DNA of 64,000 bases from Klebsormidium nitens (Eukaryota; Plantae; Klebsormidiophyceae): NCBI GenBank assembly GCA_000708835.1, contig DF236980.1:163999-227998 (forward strand), in the 5' to 3' direction. Below are positions 22,985 through 34,900 of the stretch, piece by piece (within the stretch, counting starts at the first letter, position 1; each line of letters starts with the position of its first letter). The position numbers and the translations under genes are program-made. Below the pieces are notes generated by a model. It searched no databases and was not told the origin of the DNA. It saw nothing but the letters and a program-made list of their open reading frames with translations.

Positions 22985-24681
22985 CTATTGAATATAGGAT
23001 CGAAGTGCCGCTACAGCATCCCCTTTATGCTCTCGAAGAATCCTTTCGGCCTCCTTTTTGTCGAGCTGCGCGGAAAAGTAAACTGTTGAGATGATGAAGT
23101 GGAGAAGCGAGATTGAAGAATCTAATGCGACCGATCATTCAGAACGATATCAGAGCTCGAAACATCTCTGACACGCAAGCAGCTGTCGATAAGGTCAACA
23201 TTACAAGCTTCGAGAAGACTTAAACGCCATCGACTGTGGTGGATCACACCTCACCTCTAGTTCGTTTACGATGACGTCTAAATCCGACTGGCTGACTTTC
23301 ACTGCCGCCAGCTCCTTTTCTCTGCACACACGGATCCATCAATCTTGTGAGCCTTTGCAACTCAAAAGGTCAGCTTATTGTGTTCCCCTGATGAATCCGT
23401 ATTGTCTGCAGGAATTGGATTTGTCCTACAATGGAGTGCGAAAAACCACAACCGTTTTTCAGCCTTCAGTAGAACCGAAACTATGAAAAAAGTGGACGAG
23501 ACGGGACCAGAATAAGAGCTGAAGGAAAGGGAATCCGATGCTGATGAAGAAGTGAGCGTACATTGAAACTGGAATCCGTATCCGACTGGACTTCGCACAG
23601 ATATGACCCTACTGGTCGAAACTGAGCCCGCTAAGCGTCTAGCTTTTGCGAACGCCAATAGTTTCCAAGTTTTTTGACCCCTTGGATCTCCGAAGCTAAT
23701 CCCTCGGAATCGCCAGTCGTACTAAAGTCTGTGCGAACATGACAGGGGATACCTTCGGTTTCAAGGACAAGTCTGACTGATATAGAAGGGCTCAGCCGTC
23801 TCACCTTAACCGCTGCGCCTGTTTGTCAGCCGCATCGCTTGCATTTATGGACTCCATGGCCTGGAAAAAGAAGGAGCACCACCGATTGGATGGACCTTGC
23901 AAAGATTCACTTGAACATTTTCAAGGTGACTTTGTAGGGACTAATGAGGAGATTATAGAGGTGGTGGCACCTCTTTAAAAGAACTTTCCTCAGAAATGTT
24001 CAATCAGTCATTGCTGAGCCCTAGAGCTCCATAAACTGGCATCTGTGAGACTTTCCTTCGGACGTTGCTTACCACCACTTGTGGAAAAGAAAAAGGGTAA
24101 ATGAAAGTAATAATCAGAGATAGGAAGGCTGGAAAAGCACACGGGAAAAGTCCTGATGAGCCCCTCCGGATCTCACAACGGCCAGCTTAGGAAAGCTTCT
24201 CCTGAGGGGAATGCTGATCAAATGGTGGCGCTCTTTGCTGAGTTTGAAGCGGAAGTCTATGATCCTCATTCCACAACAGCATATCATGATGTCTGGAGCG
24301 GTCACACCATCAACTTCTTTCTGCCCTCTTGACTCAGAAAAATGTACAAAATATTTCTCAAAGTACTCCCGTTCGGAAACGCCGGAAGATAAGCTTTCTA
24401 TTGTCAAACAATTTCTTGACACCCCTGGAAACCCTCTGCGAGTATTCCAAAAGGATCTTTGGGTTGATTTCCAAAGGTCACGCCACAAGAGCTTTCTGCG
24501 AATTGCCTGGAAGCTGCAGGCCGCACTGCAGCTGTCGTACCTGTTTTACTTTGGAGGCGTCCATCTCTTTCTCCTCAACATAGTCCGTAATCGAGTTAAG
24601 CGCCTTGCTCTGCTGCTGGACGTCCCGGGAAGCCATTTTTGGGTCCCCATTGCCCTCCGCCTCTTGAGGATCGTCCGACAT
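22985..24681 (-). CDS. HYPK: HYPK (Huntingtin-interacting protein K; NatA-associated, UBA-like C-terminus), 114 aa, 4 exons
   Basis: Exons 24681-24541, 23860-23805, 23321-23255 and 23065-22985 total 345 nt. They give MSDDPQ...ALNSITDYVEEKEMDASKVKQAMESI...LREKELAAVKVSQSDLDVIVNELELDKKEAERILREHKGDAVAALRSYIQ, the characteristic HYPK sequence. Confidence 0.93.
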
Positions 24682-25374
24682 CTCTGACAAAGTCCTTAGC
24701 TGGAAGATGGGAAACTTTTGACTGCGCCTGACTATGGCAGCTGTCCAGAGAGTGCCCTTGCTTTTTGCTGGAGAAATGGACAATGCACCACCCTTTGAGC
24801 AATAGGTCTCAAGCACTGACCCTGTTCCCCTGTGCAAACCAACAAGGTTTTGATTTGTCACTGTGAGGGGCAAGGAGTTTGACAATGGTCTCCTATGGGC
24901 GGCCCCTGCAAACTGATCTCCAGACTGGACCGGAAAGCGCATGCAGCCTCAGTCCGACGGCGATAGTGGTGTCAATGCGCATACTTTTCGAAGCTTTTCC
25001 ATCCACCCCCCTTCTGCGTCTGCTGGTTTTCTCCCCCCCTCGAAGTTTCATTCTTTCTTTGGTATGTTGAATCCGTCGATCTGCCCAAGCTGTACGGTAT
25101 ACCGCGCTACCGACGTACCGACGGTACCGTATCCTGTAATTGCGTATACCTTATTATAAGCGGCCGGGAGTGCCTTTTCACACTTTCCCGCGCCTCCTTT
25201 CGATTCGGCCCTTGCTCAGTTCCTGACGTGCTGCCGTGCTGGACTTCTGCCAAGTGGGAGAAACGCCAACTGGTGCGTTGCCTAGGACGACGCCAGCCAA
25301 TCTTTCATGCAGATGCTCATGAGGCACGAGCTCATTTGCAAGCCAGCTGATTCAGGTTTCCAGGGACTCTAGCA
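24682..25374. promoter_or_regulatory. Divergent promoter region between HYPK and the unknown gene (693 bp)
   Basis: ATGs at 24681 (-) and 25375 (+). Confidence 0.55.
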
Positions 25375-28300
25375 ATGGGGGACGACGTTTCCGAGGCGGA
25401 GCTTGCTGACAGGGTAAATAAGGCACTCGAGGCGTATGCTCTAAAGAAAGGGGCAAAGTCGCACATTTGGATATGCGTGACAGAGGACAATGGTCCCGTG
25501 GGTGGCTGCTCCCCAAACTTGAGGCCTTACGGGCCTGGGTTGATGGATGAAGTGGAAAAGGCAACAGGAAAGTAAGCACCCAGTCTTTCCAGGTTCTCCC
25601 CGCTTGGCCTTCAAATTTGCCATTGCAATGTGCTAGCCTTGTAGAAGGAATCTAGGCACACGTTGCCTGGGTTCTTGAAACCATTCAACCAAAGCAAATG
25701 AGAGTCTGTTTGACAAGTTATCCTGCCTCTCAAGAACCAAAAATGAACGAGCGGTTTGCCCAGAAGTTGCTGGAATTCCATCCGAACATTGGCCGAAGAA
25801 TCTGGACATTGTCTCTGCAACTAGCACATTCACGTCCAGAAGGTGTTTCGCATGTGTAGAATCTCAGGCGGTTATGTTCTGATCCTTGTGACCAAAAATA
25901 CCACATCTGACTGAGGCTGATAGACTGGGCAGCAAACTTACCACTTTACCGCCACCAGCACACTCTTGCATTGTGGCAAGGCTTGGATACCCTGCAAACT
26001 TGTTCAAAAGACATGCGATCCTGAGGTTATTTGTTTGTCAACATATTATCATCCACTTATTGTCAAGCCGTATTTGACTCCTGTGTGATTCCTTTCTTTC
26101 CATTTTGCTTTCAAGACAGTTGCATTCTTCACAGATGGTTCTTGCACCAGTGCATCTCTTCCACCGACAAGCTGAGAGTGCGGTCAGGCCTTTTTGCAGC
26201 ATCTGCCAATAAAGACCCCAATGCAACCATCCTGTGAACCTACCATACATGTTCATTTTTACCTACCTTCTCAACACCGATTGAAACGCCTCATCCCCGC
26301 TCCACTCTGCTTCCTTGAAAGAGAACAGTTCCATCTCGATTACCTCGCAAACCGTTTGAACACAGATATCAGAACTGTATACTGAACGGGACCACAGCTT
26401 ATAACAGCTTGGGCGCAAAAGCAAATGGCGGCACCCTGCTTGATTGTTTCAGCGTTCAGTAAGCGTTCTAAGTATTGAGAAGGAAACTTCTTGGAATGCT
26501 AGTCCCATCAGCAGGGATCTAAGGGCCTTTGCTCATAAAGTTACCCTTGCGGCTCATCCCAAGCATTCTTGCCAAAGATCGGGGCAAGCACATTTGTTTT
26601 GAAAGCCTCTTTAGCCCCACTCTGATGCCCAGCTTGCAGGCGCAAGTCAAAGAAGACGCGCAGCGCCTAAAAACCTCAATGCAAAACCACAGATGGAAAA
26701 GAAAGAATTACTCTCAGTGCGAGTTTCATTTGTCTTTCCACATGGTGCCAATTGGCGGTGACGCCCCACTTAGAGTGTCAAGCTGCAGTACTGGCGGCAA
26801 AGTAACACTGTACATGATTACCATCCAGACAACAATGACAAAGAAAGGAAGAGCAGAGATACGAAACACCTATGATTTTGATCGCAGGAGGATTGTGGTG
26901 ACGGACGGCTCGCTGCAGCCGAACCTGTTGACAGCGGAGCAGGTGTTCAACGCAGCCGCCAAGACAAAGCACGTGGAGATCCATCCAATTGTGGCGCTTC
27001 TCATCAACGGGATGAACGAGCTCAACAACCACAAGATCCCCCGCATCAACGCCCTCACCGACCCCAGCACTGTGAGCGCCGCTTCTTTGGGATCCTCCTC
27101 TGCGTGCGCTGTTAGATCTTCGACTTTCCAAGAGAATTTAACAGCTTCCTCTGAACCCATTACATGTGATCCTGAGACTCTTTCAGCTTTTCAAGGGGCA
27201 CCTCAACCTCTCTGAGACCACCTGATTTCAAAGTGTCATTCTCTTCTTTGAACTTGCGGTTTTACCTTGGGGTCAAGTTGTTCCCTTAAACACCCACCTG
27301 TCCATTGAAAAACTGTTGGTGTTCCTTAGCATGTTCTGCAAATGTAGCAGCCAGTAACTCCCAACCTCCTTGAAGGCGCGACACAGGAGCTTCATATAGT
27401 TTTAGTTCTTTGTAGCGCCATACCGTCAAGGAGACTAAAGATACGTTATTCGTTTCATGTTGCCGCCCGCGGTGTCCATATAAGTTTTTCATCGACCAAA
27501 CGGCCAGAGACATTCTGACCCTTCCTCATACACGGTTGTGCTTCTTCTCCTTTTAATGCCCAAAGCTATTACTGGAGCGCAAGCTCATCAAGAGGTTTTG
27601 AGCATATGTCTAATGCAGCCCGGCAGGGTTGGAGCGACTCCGCTGCTCATATCTCCTTCAATCAAGCGCACTGGGAGGAACTGAAAAAGGGAACAGCCAA
27701 CACAACTTTTTGACACCCCTCCTGAGGTGCCAGAGTGGTTCTTGGTTTCTTCTCATTCAAAATAATCCTGCCTTCCTTTCATCAAGAAAACCTGCGAAAT
27801 AAGGAACTAACTGAAACATGCTTCAGTCTGTTTCCTGTCCTTCCCTGTCCTTCCCTGTCCTTTCCTGTCCTTTCTTGTAATGCAGTCAAAACCACAACTA
27901 GATTTCAAAACGCACCTTCTATTCCAGGTTCCGGAGTGGTTTCCTTTCAGCGCAGACAAGTACGCGGCGCGCGCCCAGAAGATGGACCTTCCGGAGCTGT
28001 TCAAGGTGAACTGACCTCACATTGGCTGACAACTACCAGGGCGATCGTTCTTGTTTGTAAGAATCTGTTAGTTAGGCTACTGACATATCACCAATTTTGT
28101 TCATGATTAAGTCGGGGGTTTTGCACACGGCATCTCGACAGGCGGCTGGATTGGACTGTCAATCTGGGAGTAGCTTTCAACCGATCCGATCATATCCGCC
28201 TCAACTCGTTCCAATGTAGCCATCTCATGCTGCTTGGCTGTCTGAAACACAGTTGTTAGGCTAAAAAACCGTTGGGGAATTGTCTACAAACCGTAGCATT

Positions 28301-30508
28301 GCTTGGTGAAACCTCAAGACATTGTGCATAAAGCCCCCAAACCAGTGCAAGCTGGAGTGCCGGGCACAGAAAACCCCGAAGAGTAGAGAAACTTCCAAAG
28401 CGTTAACGTGCTGGAACCTGTTCAGGTGATGGACGTCGTGTTTGCTTCCATCCGGGGGGACCTCCCCAAGATCAAGAAGCTGCACACGATGCTGGAGAAC
28501 GTGTTCAAGTCCGGCTGCTGCTCCATCGGCACGCGCGCCGCGGTTGACGCCTTCTTCGACTTCCTCACGCAGGACGCCATGCAGGCACGCCAAATGTTAT
28601 CCCCTTTTTTGTCGTGTCATTTTTGTGGTTTTTTCTCTTCCCTTTTGCTTCTGCTCTTTTCTTTTGTGACAGTCCCGTTGGCCTCTTTTCTTCTCTTTCT
28701 GGTTGCTTTAGTCCCTTTTCGTTGCTTCTTCAAGTCTCTCTTCTTGGCTTCTTCTCTTCTCTTTCCTTGCTGATATTCACCAGCATTTGTTGTCTCGACT
28801 CTCGAGCATGCTACTGTGAGGCAGACCGTCCTCTTATGACCCTGCTTTCGGTTTGTTGATATCTCTTAAAGTCTCGTTACTTGGCTGTGTCCTTCGTCTC
28901 TCTCTTGAAGTCCTCGCATATGCCAACATGCAGAAATGTGGCCACAATGCCTTGTACATCATGCATCGAGTCGTCCGCTTGCTTTCTTTTCTCTACCCAT
29001 TCTTCCGTAGTGTGGTTTCTGCTTTCTTGTCCGGGCTGTTGGTCCTCTCCGCCAAGCTGCCGCTCTCAAGACGTTTCTTGGTACAAGTTGGTCTCTTTAA
29101 TGAGTGGCTGAGCGCTCTTTCTTGACAACATAGAGCCAGTAGTAGATCACAAGGCGGATCAGAGAAGCAGGCTACAGTTTCACCAATCTGCCCTTGTGAG
29201 AAACACGAGCGACGAGACCTGCGAGTGTTGCTTCTTGCATAACCCTCGATGATTTGAGCCGCTGTTATTTCAACAGCCTGTTCAATGGAATGAAAGAGAG
29301 GCCGCTTCGCTTTAGGGCGGTCCCTCTCAGCATATTCCCTCACAGACATCCCTCTTGAAAATCTTCTTGGAATCTGCGCCAAAGTTGGCCCATGCTAGTT
29401 CTGTCAATCCTACTTCGGGAGGGCTTAAGTCCGACATAACTTGTTGCATGAACAGTGTTTATTTTACAGCCATACCAAGATGTGGAATCCTGAAGAATCT
29501 TTCTTCAGACCAGCAATCGGCTTGCCCCATTTTCACCTTATTTAAAGATCAGGTGTTTGTTAAGACTAACGAGTGACATTTTCCCCGTCCAGCCCGTGGT
29601 CACAGAGGCGCTGAGCGGGCTGTTCCGGAAGCGGCTCCAGTCGGAGCTCGAGAACGGGAGCGGGGTCCAGGAGAAGCGGAGGAGAGGGGACGGAGACGGG
29701 GGCACGGGAGACAAGGTGCAATTACAGTCTCTCAACTTTTTCAGCTGAATCTTGTGGCAAATGAATGGTTTGGCGGTGAACAACGTCGCTGCAGGTTAAG
29801 TTGTTTTTGAGAAAGGCCGGATGCAGAGCCGCTGCTGCAGAAGTAATCCTCTTACAAGACAGAGTGCTTGATGGTTTCTGGAAAAGCCAAAGCGCCTCTG
29901 CCTTTCCCACCAGAAGCGCACACGCTGGTGAAATACACGCTGTTTCACTTTGTGGAAGGAGAACGCACCGCTGTTTGAAGGCTCTAGATCTCATTTACTC
30001 TTGAGCTTTGTCGCCCCATCTGTGAAGCCTGGTAGCCATAGCCGAGCCTACCTAAGCTTTGGCTGTCTTCAAAAGTCCGCCGGCTAACTGCGCGAATCGA
30101 TCTGAAGACCTGTGGCATTTCGGAACGCAAATCCAGAGCGTGAAACGAAAAACCGAAACGTACACTACGTCCAGCGATTGAAGAGCTGAACCCTTGGATT
30201 CGTGAAATGCCCAGCAAAATGCAGCACTGGAAAATGGGAACGTCATTCTCGGCTGGTGTATGTTGCAGGCGGAGCCAGAGAGCGACGAGTCGCCTGAGGA
30301 CCGGCGGCAATGGAGCAATCCGAGCGACACCAGCAGCCTTTCCTTCCTATGGCCTTTCGAAGACTCGTTACAGGTGCGTACAGTTAAACCAGCAACTCGA
30401 ACGTCCATCGGCATTGCTGACGAGCGCCTAGGGGCGTTGTTTTTGCAGAGTCCACGTGCTAGGAATAGGCTATACAAGTGCAGAACTGTCGGCATTCAGC
30501 TGGTGTAA
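25375..30508 (+). CDS. Uncharacterised protein of ~300-326 aa; possible NRF1/Ewg- or EIN3/DUF2841-like DNA-binding protein (hypothesis)
   Basis: Phase-consistent exons are 25375-25571, 26888-27071, 27928-28005, 28426-28584 (putative GC donor), 29593-29715 and 30269-30508, with an optional in-frame 75-nt intron at 30374-30448. Internal exons have strong GC3 codon bias. The 3' end and the GC donor are uncertain. Confidence 0.7.
27831..27878. repeat. 10-mer tandem repeat TT(T/C)CCTGTCC, about 4.5 copies
   Basis: Directly visible, upstream of the acceptor at 27927. Confidence 0.85.
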
Positions 30509-31904
30509 TCAGCTATTTCGTCTCTCCGAGAACGACACAAGGTGGAGGGTCACGATCGTGTGGAAACGCCGACTTCCGATCCCTTTCCCTCGGCGAGCTG
30601 ACGGGAAAGTTTTGCACACTAATCAGACATGTAACGTGCTCCTTATTTTTTTAAGCACGGTTTGGTTGTTCTCACCGAGCCAGTAATCTCCGGCTTCAGC
30701 CGGATTGCCAGACACGCTGGCACGCTACTTGCTGCTCATCGGTGGCAGAGGCCATTGACCAGTCCGATGAGAGCTGGGCCTCTTTTCTGAGTTGCTTTCA
30801 TGCTTTGATTTGTGCAGAGTCCGGCTCTCGTTCAACGCGCGACACGGTGATATCGCAAACCATTTTCTAGGCTCATGCATTTGTAGTCAAATGGAAACCA
30901 CAAGGGGTCAGCGAGGCCGGCTTTTTGGTAACCCTAGTTTGCATGTATATGTTTTCACCTACACAATAGCGGTTGGTTTGAAGGTTTAGCAACGAGTTGG
31001 GGTTAAGCTCATCGTAACCGATGGGTGGATGTAGCAGGCTCCGGAGTTGTTGAAAAGTGCTGCAATATGCGGCCAAAATGGGTGTCAAAAGGTATCTCTG
31101 GGTTGACCATGCAGTCAAACACGTCGACGTTCTTGCTTAGTGTGTTAATATAGTAGGGGAAAGGCAGACACGAGGCCGTTAGCTTGCAGCTACGTGCATT
31201 TGGAGGGCTCGATGCTCGACATGCTTCCATGCAGAGGCCTGAGCGTACTTAATCTAAACAAATACATACTCCTAAGTTGATGTCAGACTTGGCTGTGGTT
31301 TAGGTCCGACCAACCTTTCTGGATGCAGGATGAGTCCACTTAGTTTATATTTGACTGAGGATATACAAGATTCGGAGTCCCCAAAACAGTGTCGTGTCGT
31401 ATAATTATCCACTTACAGGCAACTTGGCGTCAGCCACTGAAATATGCTGATACTTTATTAGGTGTATGATCCGGCGATGATCGAGATTAGAGCTCTACTG
31501 CTGAATGATCGTTGTGTATATTTACGTAGCCGCACATGCAAATACACTATAGTAGGTTAACTTTTAGGACAGATTCTGGCCTGTGGCGACATGTGATGAC
31601 ACGCGGGGCCGCCTGCCATGGCACCCGCAACTTTGTGCTAACATGGATAATTGTGACGTTTCCCTTTACAATATACAATTCCAGAATGGACCGCTCAATA
31701 TATGACTCAGCCATCATCCAAGCTACCTAGTCGCTGGGACATGCGCCGGCCGCAGCGTTCGCACGGCACTGCGTTGCTCCGAAATGCGCAATCCAATTCA
31801 CTCAGATGTTCGAATGCAAGCGACTAATCGGGTTGAAGGCAACGCTAATAACATGCGCGACAGCCAGGAGATACTTCCTGACACCAGATGCACAGGAAGC
31901 ACAT

Positions 31905-34900
31905 TCATGCCGCCAACTTCGTGTCAAATATCCGGTAGCACCTGAGACCACCTGAGCTAGGATCGTCCGGAACGTACGACTGTATGCAGCACACCAGCCA
32001 AGGGGGATCCCTGACCCTTGGCTGCTGCGGCTCCTCGTTGTCTCCGTCCTCTGGGGCGGTGGCTTGGCCGAGCGCTAAACCCATTTTCCACCGAAGCTCG
32101 TCCACGCCGTCGTCCTCTTGGTGTGAGTTTCGGGGCGACCACCCGCCGAAGAACGTCTCCTGCGGGTCGCCGAAAAGATGCGCGTCAGCGTGCTTGGGCA
32201 GCTGAAAGATGTGAATCGGTCAGAGTGTCAATCTTGTTGCAGCGCCCGACGTGGTCCTTTTCGAAGGGAAGACTCAGCGAGTTGGGTCGTCATTTCGGAG
32301 AACAATTTGTCAGGCCCTGGCACTCCAAAGCGTATGCGTCCTTCTCTTTTGTCTAAACCGTTGAATATAGGAAGTAATCGAGGCTCGCAGTATTCCCCAC
32401 AACGATTGCTTCAAAATAGGTTCCACATGTCTTTCTCACCCGAGTTCCAAGCAGAGAAAGCAACTATTTCTTGAAGGCCACAAACTGGTGAAGCGTTCTT
32501 CACTGCAATCTTTTTAAACAGATCCTCACACGCGAGTCTCAAGTGATATGAGCAAGTAATATGTCGATCCCCATTAATCACACCCTGGTAATTAAGCTTA
32601 TCAACCCGCCATCGTTCCTCACCGCATCCCTCCCAAATAGCTCCGCACTCAGCCGCGCCGTCGGATCCTCGAGCGTCAGCGTCGCTCGAAACACCCACTC
32701 CTCCCGCCTCCGCCGCTTTCTAGACGTCCCCTCAGGCCCCGAAACCCCTTCCGGATTTCGCGGGCTATCCCCCGGGGCCTCCCCACAGACTCCCCTTTCT
32801 AAGTCGGCCTCTACCGCTGCCCTCAGCGCGTCGTCGAGTGACGTCATGCTGACGCACAGGTCTTCGGTGCGCGGGGGCCAGCTGGACCGGACGCGGACGA
32901 TGCACCGGAAGCGGGAGTTGCGGACCTGAAACGGAGCGAAACGAAAAGAAAGTCTCAGCAAAGTTCGAGGCGGTGCCCAAACAAGGGAGTTTCTGGCGCT
33001 GATTGAAGCGTGCTTTAGGTTTTTGAAGGTCGCCGCGGAAGAGCCGCTGACGCAAGATTTTCTGGGCGACCGGAATGTAGCCCAACAACTCTCTCCTGAC
33101 GCTCACCTCACGTCACTTCAGCTGCAGATGTGCATGACGTCACTTACGAAGGCTTGACAGGATCGGCAATGTTCGGGTGGTAAAAGGACCGTCAAAATCT
33201 CCGTCTGGTAAGCAAGTGCCACGTGGCACCTTCCAATTATCAAACTAGTCACTGCAATGATTAGTCAGAAGCTGTGAGCATCCGCGTGAGAGGAAGTGAA
33301 ACGAGAAGGTTTTTCGTTGCAAGAGTTTTAGAAGAGGACGCCTCAACAGAGGCGATTTTCCCCGTATGCATCAAGACGTAACCGAAATGGACAAGCGGGT
33401 GCTACGAGCCAGTCCCCCAGAGAAAAGGAACCAGGACTCACTGAACATCCGCGTTTTCGCTGGATTGCAAGTGCTTCCCTCGGAAGGTGAAGGAATGTGT
33501 TTCTTTGCGTACCTACTTCTGTGCACCGGCCAACAGATTGGCACATCCGTCGAGCAGTATCGTCGTAATTCAGAATAGGACAGCAGATTAATAAAACTTG
33601 CGTCTCCCCGCGAATTGCGAGCTTCTATCCTTCATCATACATGGAAGATAGTGGAATGAAATAAGAAAAGAAGTTTTGTTTTGAAGAACGAGGATGTCAA
33701 TCTCGACTATCAACTTCACGTCTGCCTAACGGACCAGCATGCCCCTGGTCCGCAGTCATCGTGACGTCAGCATCCGATGAGAGGGACCTAGAACCGACAC
33801 AATTTCCATCCCTCCGCTGGGCCTGGGGTTGCGAGCGCATCTTGCAGTTGCTGAGGAGAAGGGTTCGTCATCATGTCTTCCTAACAAACCCAAAAGCAGT
33901 TGGAAGTGACACTCAGAAGGAACTAGAACCGAGAAAATGTCCCGCACCTCCGCCGGGGTTGCGAGCGCTTCCCGCAAGGTGGAGAAGGGGACGTCAACAT
34001 ATCTTTCCAACAGACCAGCATGCACCCAAAGGCGGTGATATGACGTCAACACTTGATTGCTAACAACTAGATGCGGTGAAAACCAACGCACCTCCGCCGG
34101 GGTTGCGAGCACTTCCCGCAAGGTGGAGAAGGGGACGTCATCATGATCTGTCACGGAGTAGCGTTGCTGCACCCACGCCACCTCGTCCGTGATGCGCTCG
34201 GGCCCATTCACCCTCTCGGCATAGTGCCTGCGAACGTAGATTAGGCCTGCTGTGAATATACCAAGGTGGCTGCTTGACAGTGCCTATTCCATTTTGCAGT
34301 ATTGACTGAGAGTGAAAGCGCCCGATCGGGTTGGTTGACGGTGCCCCTTGTACCGGTATAGTGCAGTTATGAAGAGGCCGGCTGGGTTCTTTCGCGCGTC
34401 GGTCGTAAGTCCTGCGAAGGAAGCAGGTCTATGTGCAAGTTCTCCACCGGACTATCGTAACTGGTCAACAAGGCGATTGACACGGAACGGGTTGAGTGCG
34501 GCGCCTCCTGAGTCAGCTGATTTGGCAATGACCTCCTTTCAATTGCTAGACACCTCGCTCGTCTCATCACAGTGCGTCTCGTACTTAGACCGAAAAAAAT
34601 CTGGCGTCTCTATTGGAAATTTTACGACTCCTCGACATGGATGTAGCTATGCATAAGAAAGAGGAAGTCAAGCCCTCCAACTTCCACTGACCAGATCGAC
34701 GTCCGACTTAATAACCCCTGAAATGCCCCCTCTCCTCAACGGAGCCGCTCAGGCACACATCGCCACCCCCCCCTCAGCGCCTTCGCTCTTGCCCCAGCAT
34801 ACAACGTTGCGACTTCTCCCCCCCTAATTCAAGTAACAAAGTCGGTCCCCACCCTTGACTTCTCCCTTCCTAACCTCAGCCGCTCCGGCACGTGTCGTTC

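What the first reader, a model, noticed from the sequence alone, without database searches (positions are those of the whole stretch)
25375..30508. Orphan-looking gene may encode an NRF1/Ewg-like (EIN3/DUF2841-related) transcription factor
The spliced product reads LADRVNKALEAYALKKGAKSHIWICVTEDNGPVGGCSPNLRPYGPGLMDEVEKAT...AAKTKHVEIHPIVALLINGMNELNNHKIPRINALTDPSTVPEWFPFSADKYAARAQKMDLPELFKVMDVVF. The order and spacing of its motifs recall the animal NRF1 domain as I remember it (LLRKLRATLDEYTTRVGQQAIVLCIS...NPV...PLE...ILEDLESAL...DKMTQAQLRAFIPEML...KPIWWP). The matches are an L-x-x-Y helix, G, a hydrophobic strand with C, a helix, and then a P-x-W-[WF]-P motif followed by a helix. A P-x-W-W-P motif also occurs in EIN3/EIL and fungal DUF2841 proteins. 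A basic KRRR patch and an acidic tail fit a nuclear factor. NRF1-type factors are not a recognised plant family, so this could be an undescribed algal TF lineage. It sits head-to-head with HYPK.
Basis: inference. Interest (0 to 1): 0.75.

Follow-up and report, generated by a model that had tools for sequence, protein, structure and literature searches.

The report
Hidden EIN3-fold regulator gene in Klebsormidium
This well-expressed, strongly conserved alga gene, which no standard domain search recognises, encodes a compact and much-diverged relative of EIN3, the DNA-binding protein that switches genes on in the plant ethylene response; it belongs to a small family seen so far only in Klebsormidium-type algae.

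Summary
The gene is real. They place the last exon at 30818, not 30449, so the protein has 292 residues and ends at 30850. Syntenic orthologues show dN/dS of about 0.05.

HMMER-type searches recognise nothing in Pfam or among PDB sequences. Relatives are few and come only from Klebsormidium-like DNA.

Three lines tie the family to plant EIN3:
- A profile-profile comparison gives probability 91.5%, P 8.6e-7 and score 49.5. The 150 shuffled controls reached 22 at most. The alignment is collinear over both domains, including P-x-W-F-P on EIN3's PPPWWP.
- The top ESM Atlas fold hit is the EIN3 cluster.

The exon-1 domain is predicted to form a beta-sheet homodimer, like the NRF1 dimerisation and MADS domains (score 0.74, best control 0.02).

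The link to NRF1 rests on fold alone. DUF2841 has no support.

I read the gene as a dimeric nuclear EIN3-superfamily factor. DNA binding is inferred, not shown.

The scan has flagged sister genes of this family on other DNA of the same genome (s1-285444, s1-351063, s1-305652).

The parts
25252..25374 (+). 5' UTR; transcript 5' ends at about 25252-25257
   Evidence: RNA contigs start at 25252-25257, two of them with adapter remnants (tables 7 and 8).
25375..25571 (+). Exon 1, aa 1-65: the whole N-terminal helix/beta-hairpin/helix domain, with the motifs W32 and G-G-C-S-x-N-L. Predicted to be the homodimerisation module.
26888..27071 (+). Exon 2, aa 66-127: linker and first helices of the EIN3-like helical domain (K93-H94, HPIVA, R118, DP)
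27928..28005 (+). Exon 3, aa 128-153: the P-E-W-F-P loop (27931-27945), the Y-A-x-R-x-Q motif and the start of the next helix
   Evidence: Aligns on EIN3 PPPWWP in hhalign.
28426..28584 (+). Exon 4, aa 154-206: last three helices of the EIN3-like domain. D-L-P-K-I-K-K-L-H aligns to EIN3 basic domain IV (D-I-x-K-I-R-K-L). The exon is followed by a GC-AG intron.
29593..29715 (+). Exon 5, aa 207-247: tail with the basic patches FRKRLQ and EKRRRG (KRRR at 29674-29685), a candidate nuclear localisation signal
   Evidence: Conserved in the orthologues L012 and L013. The NLS role is inferred.
30269..30373 (+). Exon 6, aa 248-282: a variable acidic stretch, then the invariant hydrophobic-acidic motif LSFLWPFEDSLQ (30338-30373), a candidate activation or partner-binding motif
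   Evidence: The motif is identical in the orthologues while the flanking acidic stretch diverges.
30818..30850 (+). True last coding exon (SPALVQRATR, stop at 30848-30850). The 3' UTR runs on past 30900, to about 31440 judging from the 1584-nt contig.
   Evidence: Joint 30373|30818 in all four runs. Translation. Conserved in L012 and L013.

Best explanation
The locus is a seven-exon, highly expressed gene of Klebsormidium nitens. It encodes a 292-aa protein that is a compact, very diverged member of the EIN3 DNA-binding-domain superfamily.

Residues 1-65 (exon 1) form a helix/beta-hairpin/helix module. This module pairs with a second copy through an intermolecular beta-sheet, as the NRF1 dimerisation domain and MADS domains do. 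Residues 62-173 of EIN3, the counterpart region, are needed for EIN3 dimerisation.

Residues ~80-206 form the six-to-seven-helix EIN3 core fold with its P-x-W-F-P loop. The tail carries basic KRRR-type patches (a likely nuclear import signal) and a conserved hydrophobic-acidic motif (a likely activation or partner-binding site).

The most likely mechanism is a nuclear homodimer that places two EIN3-type helical domains on paired or inverted DNA half-sites and recruits the transcription machinery through the tail.

Shown: the gene model, expression, purifying selection, and profile and fold kinship to EIN3.
Predicted: dimerisation.
Inferred: nuclear location, DNA binding and activation.
For: Gene model and expression.

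Purifying selection: syntenic orthologues L012 and L013 are about 94-95% identical in protein. dN/dS is 0.05-0.06 at dS 0.83-0.93, and the introns cannot be aligned.

Family: five subfamilies, all from Klebsormidium-like DNA, with shared intron positions.

Homology to EIN3:
- Local hhalign of 12 full family units, including the spliced window protein, against 14 Pfam-verified EIN3 segments gives probability 91.5%, P 8.6e-7, score 49.5 and 138 collinear columns.
- The reversed control scored 12.1. The 150 shuffles had mean 14.1 and maximum 22.1.
- The N-domain alone gives P 1.6e-4 and the C-domain alone P 3.4e-3.
- The tool's own hhalign, run on the alignment with exon-fragment rows, gives the same register at E 9.9e-4.

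Fold:
- Foldseek gives probability 0.92 and TM 0.61 by target.
- The ESM Atlas top hit is the EIN3 cluster, with 136 residues spanning both domains.

Dimer: score 0.74 against 0.02 for the best of three controls. The mark was reached by 21 of 30 proteins solved as homo-pairs and 0 of 23 solved as single chains. The runs agree in at least 96% of contacts, and the partner's pLDDT is at least 85.

EIN3 residues 82-352 form a dimer, while the core 174-306 is a monomer (PMC4564277). A tandem two-unit paralogue, KFL_002750080, looks like a covalent dimer.
Against: - No HMMER-level similarity: Pfam EIN3_DNA-bd does not hit any member, and the family profiles do not hit EIN3 in the PDB.
- The structures were predicted for paralogues 50% and 41% identical to the window protein, not for the window protein itself. 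Their alignments were shallow (pLDDT 76-78).
- The N-domain is acidic (net -3), where the same region of EIN3 carries +7 to +9.
- EIN3 K245 aligns to Glu, and basic domain III is not conserved.
- The C-domain has a net charge of -1. DNA binding is therefore not assured.
- The hhalign probability falls to 21.7% when exon fragments are used as alignment rows.
Confidence: 0.62

Rival explanations
1. The protein has the EIN3 fold but does not bind DNA. It would act as a dimerising adaptor or regulator, for example by pairing with other family members or docking partners through the LSFLWPFEDSLQ motif.
For: The N-domain is acidic and the helical domain nearly neutral. EIN3 basic domains II and III and K245 are not conserved. 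A strong dimer is predicted. The short linear motif in the tail is conserved.
Against: Invariant basic residues persist in the helical domain: K/R93-H94, R118, R142 and R163. The charge of the C-domain lies within the range of EIN3 core domains. NLS-like patches and an acidic-hydrophobic tail fit a transcription factor.
Confidence: 0.2
2. The protein is a true member of the animal-type NRF1/Ewg family, rather than of the EIN3 lineage.
Confidence: 0.05
3. This is a lineage-specific orphan, and its likeness to EIN3 is convergent or a chance arrangement of helices.
Against: EIN3 was named before any search was run. It then ranked first in three independent searches: two models against the PDB, and the ESM Atlas. 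In the second model it stands 3.6 Z units above the next hit. Sequence profiles agree in the same register across two domains, at z = 12.6 against shuffles.
Confidence: 0.08

Closest known systems
EIN3/EIL transcription factors (Pfam PF04873 EIN3_DNA-bd; structures 4ZDS and 1WIJ)
   Different: Sequence identity is only about 20% and Pfam does not detect the family. The protein has 292 aa against about 600 in EIN3. It lacks the N-terminal acidic and basic regions BD I and II, and it lacks the 12-residue insertion after the Trp loop. K245 and BD III are not conserved. It has no long C-terminal regulatory region. The gene is intron-rich, whereas every land-plant EIN3 I fetched was a single ORF. 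The family is restricted to Klebsormidium-like algae.
KFL_002750080 of K. nitens (P0011, 'hypothetical protein') and the other family members found here
   Same: They have the same domain unit at 38-50% identity, the same intron positions and the same invariant residues.
   Different: KFL_002750080 carries two units in tandem. The L008 and L009 type has long C-terminal extensions. The window gene is a single unit with its own conserved tail motifs, and it forms its own clade with L012 and L013.
NRF1/Ewg (Pfam PF10491; structures 8K4L and 8K3D)
MADS domain (SRF-TF)
   Different: There is no basic DNA-binding N-terminal helix; the helix here is acidic. There is no Pfam hit.

Membership tests
EIN3/EIL (PF04873 EIN3_DNA-bd) | Pfam HMM match above the gathering score | tested here: not met
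   No hit at E up to 10 for the window exons, P0003, P0002 or any of the 26 rows of A1. Canonical EIN3 segments score 1e-126.
EIN3/EIL (PF04873 EIN3_DNA-bd) | Collinear profile-profile similarity over the domain | tested here: met
   hhalign gives probability 91.5%, P 8.6e-7 and 138 columns. The maximum of the shuffled controls was 22.1 against a real score of 49.5. The tool's run on fragment rows gives E 9.9e-4 and probability 21.7% in the same register.
EIN3/EIL (PF04873 EIN3_DNA-bd) | Six-helix core DBD fold of 4ZDS | tested here: met
EIN3/EIL (PF04873 EIN3_DNA-bd) | Proline-rich P-P-P-W-W-P loop | tested here: met
   P-x-W-F-P is nearly invariant in the family; one member has PPWWP. It aligns on the EIN3 loop.
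EIN3/EIL (PF04873 EIN3_DNA-bd) | Basic domains II-IV and K245 (function-critical in EIN3) | tested here: not met
   BD II is absent and the N-domain is acidic. K245 aligns to Glu. Only BD IV is partly kept, as K-I-K-K-L (the EIN3 residues are from PMC4564277).
EIN3/EIL (PF04873 EIN3_DNA-bd) | Homodimer through the region N-terminal of the core | tested here: met
   This is a prediction only: score 0.74 against 0.02 for the best control on the window's own exon 1.
EIN3/EIL (PF04873 EIN3_DNA-bd) | Binds EIN3-binding-site DNA; regulated by EBF F-box proteins and ethylene | not testable with these tools
   Needs EMSA or DAP-seq, and protein-stability assays.
NRF1/Ewg (PF10491) | Pfam HMM match, or a profile match to NRF1 chains | tested here: not met
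   No Pfam hit. The family profiles and the EIN3 profile do not hit 8K4L or 8K3D sequences at E up to 10.
NRF1/Ewg (PF10491) | Dimerisation-domain fold with an intermolecular beta-sheet | tested here: met
NRF1/Ewg (PF10491) | Three-helix DBD with base contacts R206, N242 and R244 | tested here: inconclusive
DUF2841 (PF11001) | Pfam HMM match | tested here: not met
   No hit. Nothing else was tested.

The most novel reading that the evidence does not exclude
The Klebsormidium family would be a surviving side branch showing that plant EIN3 is not a de novo, plant-only fold. Instead, EIN3 would descend from an older eukaryotic transcription-factor type built from a MADS/NRF1-like beta-sheet dimerisation domain and a Pro-Trp-loop helical DBD. 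Plant EIN3 and animal NRF1/Ewg would then be homologous.
Probability: 0.25. Interest if true: 0.85.

Novelty: new variant of a known kind. Interest (0 to 1): 0.62.

Why it matters
EIN3/EIL is classed as a plant-specific DNA-binding fold with no structural relatives (PMC4564277; Plant-TFClass preprint 10.1101/2022.11.22.517060). Its origin is placed at the common ancestor of Klebsormidium and later streptophytes (PMC7027972).

A second, Pfam-invisible, multi-member EIN3-fold family in exactly that lineage does three things:
- It gives a handle on how the fold arose.
- It shows that domain-based transcription-factor censuses of streptophyte algae miss real regulators.
- It offers a minimal 215-residue dimerisation-plus-DBD unit that could be easier to crystallise with DNA than EIN3 itself. 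I found no EIN3-DNA complex among PDB sequences.

The N-domain's likeness to NRF1 and MADS makes a deeper link between animal and plant factors testable.

Tried and rejected
- Pfam on single exons, on the paralogues and on all alignment rows found nothing relevant.
- phmmer or hmmsearch of exons 1 and 2 and of the family profiles A1, A2 and A3 against PDB sequences found no EIN3 or NRF1. The only hits were weak chance matches such as uS5 and a synthetic construct.
- A word-indexed protein search used exon 2 inside a stop-free 228-aa ORF, to widen the length window. It found nothing.
- The ESM Atlas search by language-model features gave no usable hit.
- Foldseek against the PDB found nothing at E <= 0.001 for either model.
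- The EIN3 profile against the PDB did not reach NRF1.
- P0007 and P0009 from the big search are bacterial Gly-rich repeat proteins. I discarded them as spurious.
- The spliced 292-aa protein has no reference, so I never sent it to Pfam, AlphaFold, Atlas or the cluster look-ups. I used it only inside scripts. Structure work was done on the paralogue KFL_002750080.
Full report
**Gene model**

I laid contigs of four RNA-type runs from four studies on 25000-30900. They carry these joints: 25571|26888, 27071|27928, 28005|28426, 28584|29593 (GC..AG once the 3-base ambiguity is resolved) and 29715|30269. Exon depth is 136-445 and intron depth 3-8.

The CDS therefore ends SPALVQRATR with a stop at 30848-30850, and the protein has 292 aa. 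Transcripts start near 25252-25257. CDS GC3 is 0.79 against an intron GC of 0.47.

An earlier scan note names the genome as Klebsormidium nitens. This fits the closest named relative, KFL_002750080.

**Relatives**

Because the protein is spliced, it has no reference. I searched its exons separately and used the spliced sequence only in scripts.

- Pfam finds nothing.
- An exhaustive phmmer of exon 1 against 1.84 billion representatives gave only eight real hits. One is a 66-aa exon-1 ORF 95% identical to ours. Others are pieces of a two-unit protein, and several are exon-1-sized ORFs on Logan, ENA or JGI contigs.
- P0011 is K. nitens KFL_002750080, annotated as a 'hypothetical protein' of 766 aa. 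It holds two ~210-aa units.
- tblastn on the fetched contigs shows downstream exons with the same intron positions.
- A tree resolves five subfamilies. The window gene forms its own clade with L012 and L013.
- No protein carrying our exon 1 or domain turned up from the public K. nitens annotation, although the paralogue did. The gene seems unannotated or mis-modelled there.

**Selection**

L012 and L013 (JGI metagenome 3300060284) hold syntenic orthologues, and the downstream gene is conserved. Over the 205 domain codons, protein identity is about 94-95%, dN/dS is 0.05-0.06 and dS is 0.83-0.93. The introns cannot be aligned.

The KRRR patch, the LSFLWPFEDSLQ motif and the RNA-supported last exon are all conserved. 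The acidic stretch between the first two is not. Intron 3 is absent in the orthologues.

**Fold**

I predicted AF2 models for the two units of KFL_002750080, which are 50% and 41% identical to ours. They reach pLDDT 75.8 and 78.0. Both show a helix, two strands and a helix, then a linker and seven helices.

An exhaustive VIA-align scan of 48,161 PDB representatives gave these results:

|---|---|---|---|---|
| 1 | EIN3 core DBD 4zds_B | 1 | 7.8 | rmsd 3.9, 102 aligned, model 79-205 on EIN3 173-301 |
| 1 | NRF1 8k4l_B (dimerisation domain on model 1-68) | 3 | 6.5 | rmsd 3.4, 67 aligned |
| 1 | SRF MADS | 6 | 5.1 | |
| 2 | NRF1 8k4l_B | 5 | 4.5 | |
| 2 | NRF1 DBD 8k3d_A | 28 | 3.8 | 75 of 105 aligned |

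Foldseek found nothing at E <= 0.001. It did give EIN3 the highest probability (0.92, TM 0.61 by target) and placed NRF1 second (E 0.055). The ESM Atlas fold search ranks an EIN3 cluster first, with TM 0.43 and 136 residues spanning both domains.

**Sequence-level test**

HMMER profiles of the family do not reach EIN3 or NRF1 in the PDB. To obtain EIN3 sequences from a tool, I scanned metagenome contigs with a 30-nt degenerate pattern for A-S-D-N-L-R-x-W-W-K. Of the 97 loci returned, 86 carry long EIN3 ORFs, and Pfam EIN3_DNA-bd scores them at 1e-126.

| hhalign comparison | Result |
|---|---|
| 12 full family units (spliced window protein as master) vs 14 non-redundant EIN3 segments | probability 91.5%, P 8.6e-7, score 49.5, 138 collinear columns |
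| Reversed template | score 12.1 |
| 150 column shuffles | mean 14.1, SD 2.8, maximum 22.1 |
| N-domain alone | P 1.6e-4 |
| C-domain alone | P 3.4e-3 |
| Tool's hhalign on alignment A1 (exon-fragment rows) | same register, E 9.9e-4, probability 21.7% |

The register pairs these motifs:
- W-I-V-V..G-G-C-S-x-N-L with F-V-Y-G-I-I..G-A-S-D-N-L;
- H-P-I-V-A with L-G-S-L-L-S;
- P-x-W-F-P with P-P-W-W-P;
- M-D-L..L-F with H-D-L-K-K-A-W;
- D-L-P-K-I-K-K-L with D-I-x-K-I-R-K-L.

The ends of the structural alignment (offsets 94 and 96) agree with this register.

**Dimer**

Two copies of the window's own exon-1 peptide score 0.74. The best of three controls scored 0.02. The mark was reached by 21 of 30 proteins solved as homo-pairs and 0 of 23 solved as single chains. 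The runs agree in at least 96% of contacts, and the partner's pLDDT is at least 85.

Strand 29-35 pairs antiparallel with its mate, and helix 10-21 packs against its mate. [quoted passage not shown] It also matches the finding that EIN3 82-352 is a dimer while the core 174-306 is a monomer (PMC4564277). The pass may partly reflect the model's memory of solved MADS-type dimers. The tandem two-unit paralogue looks like a covalent version of this dimer, which is my inference.

**What argues for caution on function**

- The N-domain is acidic (net -3), where the same EIN3 region carries +7 to +9.
- EIN3 basic domains II and III and K245 are not conserved.
- The helical domain has a net charge of -1. 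This lies at the low end of the family range (-2 to +8) and just below the EIN3-core range (0 to +8).
- Invariant basic residues remain: K/R93-H94, R118, R142 and R163.

DNA binding is therefore plausible but unproven. I put EIN3-superfamily homology at about 0.85 and a sequence-specific DNA-binding role at about 0.5-0.6.

**Comparison and novelty**

The literature treats EIL as a plant-specific fold with no other structural homologue and dates its origin to the Klebsormidium-plus-later-streptophyte ancestor. I found no paper describing this family or an EIN3-NRF1 link.

Within this scan, the family was already flagged on other pieces of the same genome: s1-285444, s1-351063 and s1-305652. The window gene is a further, single-unit member with its own conserved tail.

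My verdict is a new variant of a known kind. The NRF1 label is a fold-level resemblance only. DUF2841 is unsupported.

Noticed in passing
window 28006-28425 versus L012:3467-3703 and L013:3464-3700: Intron 3 of the window gene is absent in the orthologues, where exons 3 and 4 form one exon. An intron was therefore gained or lost between close Klebsormidium lineages.
   Followed up: partly
window 28585-29592: Intron 4 is a GC-AG intron confirmed by RNA contigs. Its 5' part (about 28590-28780) is a strongly T/C-rich tract, with an AT skew of -0.51 in the 500-base window 28500-28999.
   Followed up: partly
L003:3532-5127, L010:5584-6360, L011:5584-6360: An F-box/LRR gene (PF24758, with faint PF12937) lies a few kb upstream of the two-unit family member in the metagenome contigs. 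This is curious, because EIN3 is controlled by the F-box proteins EBF1 and EBF2. It may be coincidence.
   Followed up: no
L008:5528-8365 and L009:12153-13529: In one subfamily, the exon that carries the P-x-W/C-F-P loop and the last helices continues into a very long ORF (945 and 458 aa). Those members therefore have large C-terminal extensions of unknown nature.
   Followed up: no
window 24478-24942 (-): An upstream divergent ORF carries a DYVEEKE motif that, from memory, resembles HYPK. Pfam gives no hit and no UBA-like exon was found. The ATG-to-ATG distance to the studied gene is about 700 bp, which suggests a shared bidirectional promoter.
   Followed up: partly
window 31890-34235 (-) and L012:7407-10118: The downstream neighbour is conserved in synteny with the orthologous contig. 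There, one called product has a weak OB_POT1A (PF25507) hit.
   Followed up: no
P0011 against P0003: The annotated KFL_002750080 (766 aa, two units) differs from the transcriptome ORF of a sister species (542 aa). That ORF starts inside the inter-unit linker and covers only unit 2. This points to either an alternative start or a partial transcript.
   Followed up: no
window 27830-27880: A short tandem array of CCTGTCCTTCC-like units lies in intron 2.
   Followed up: no
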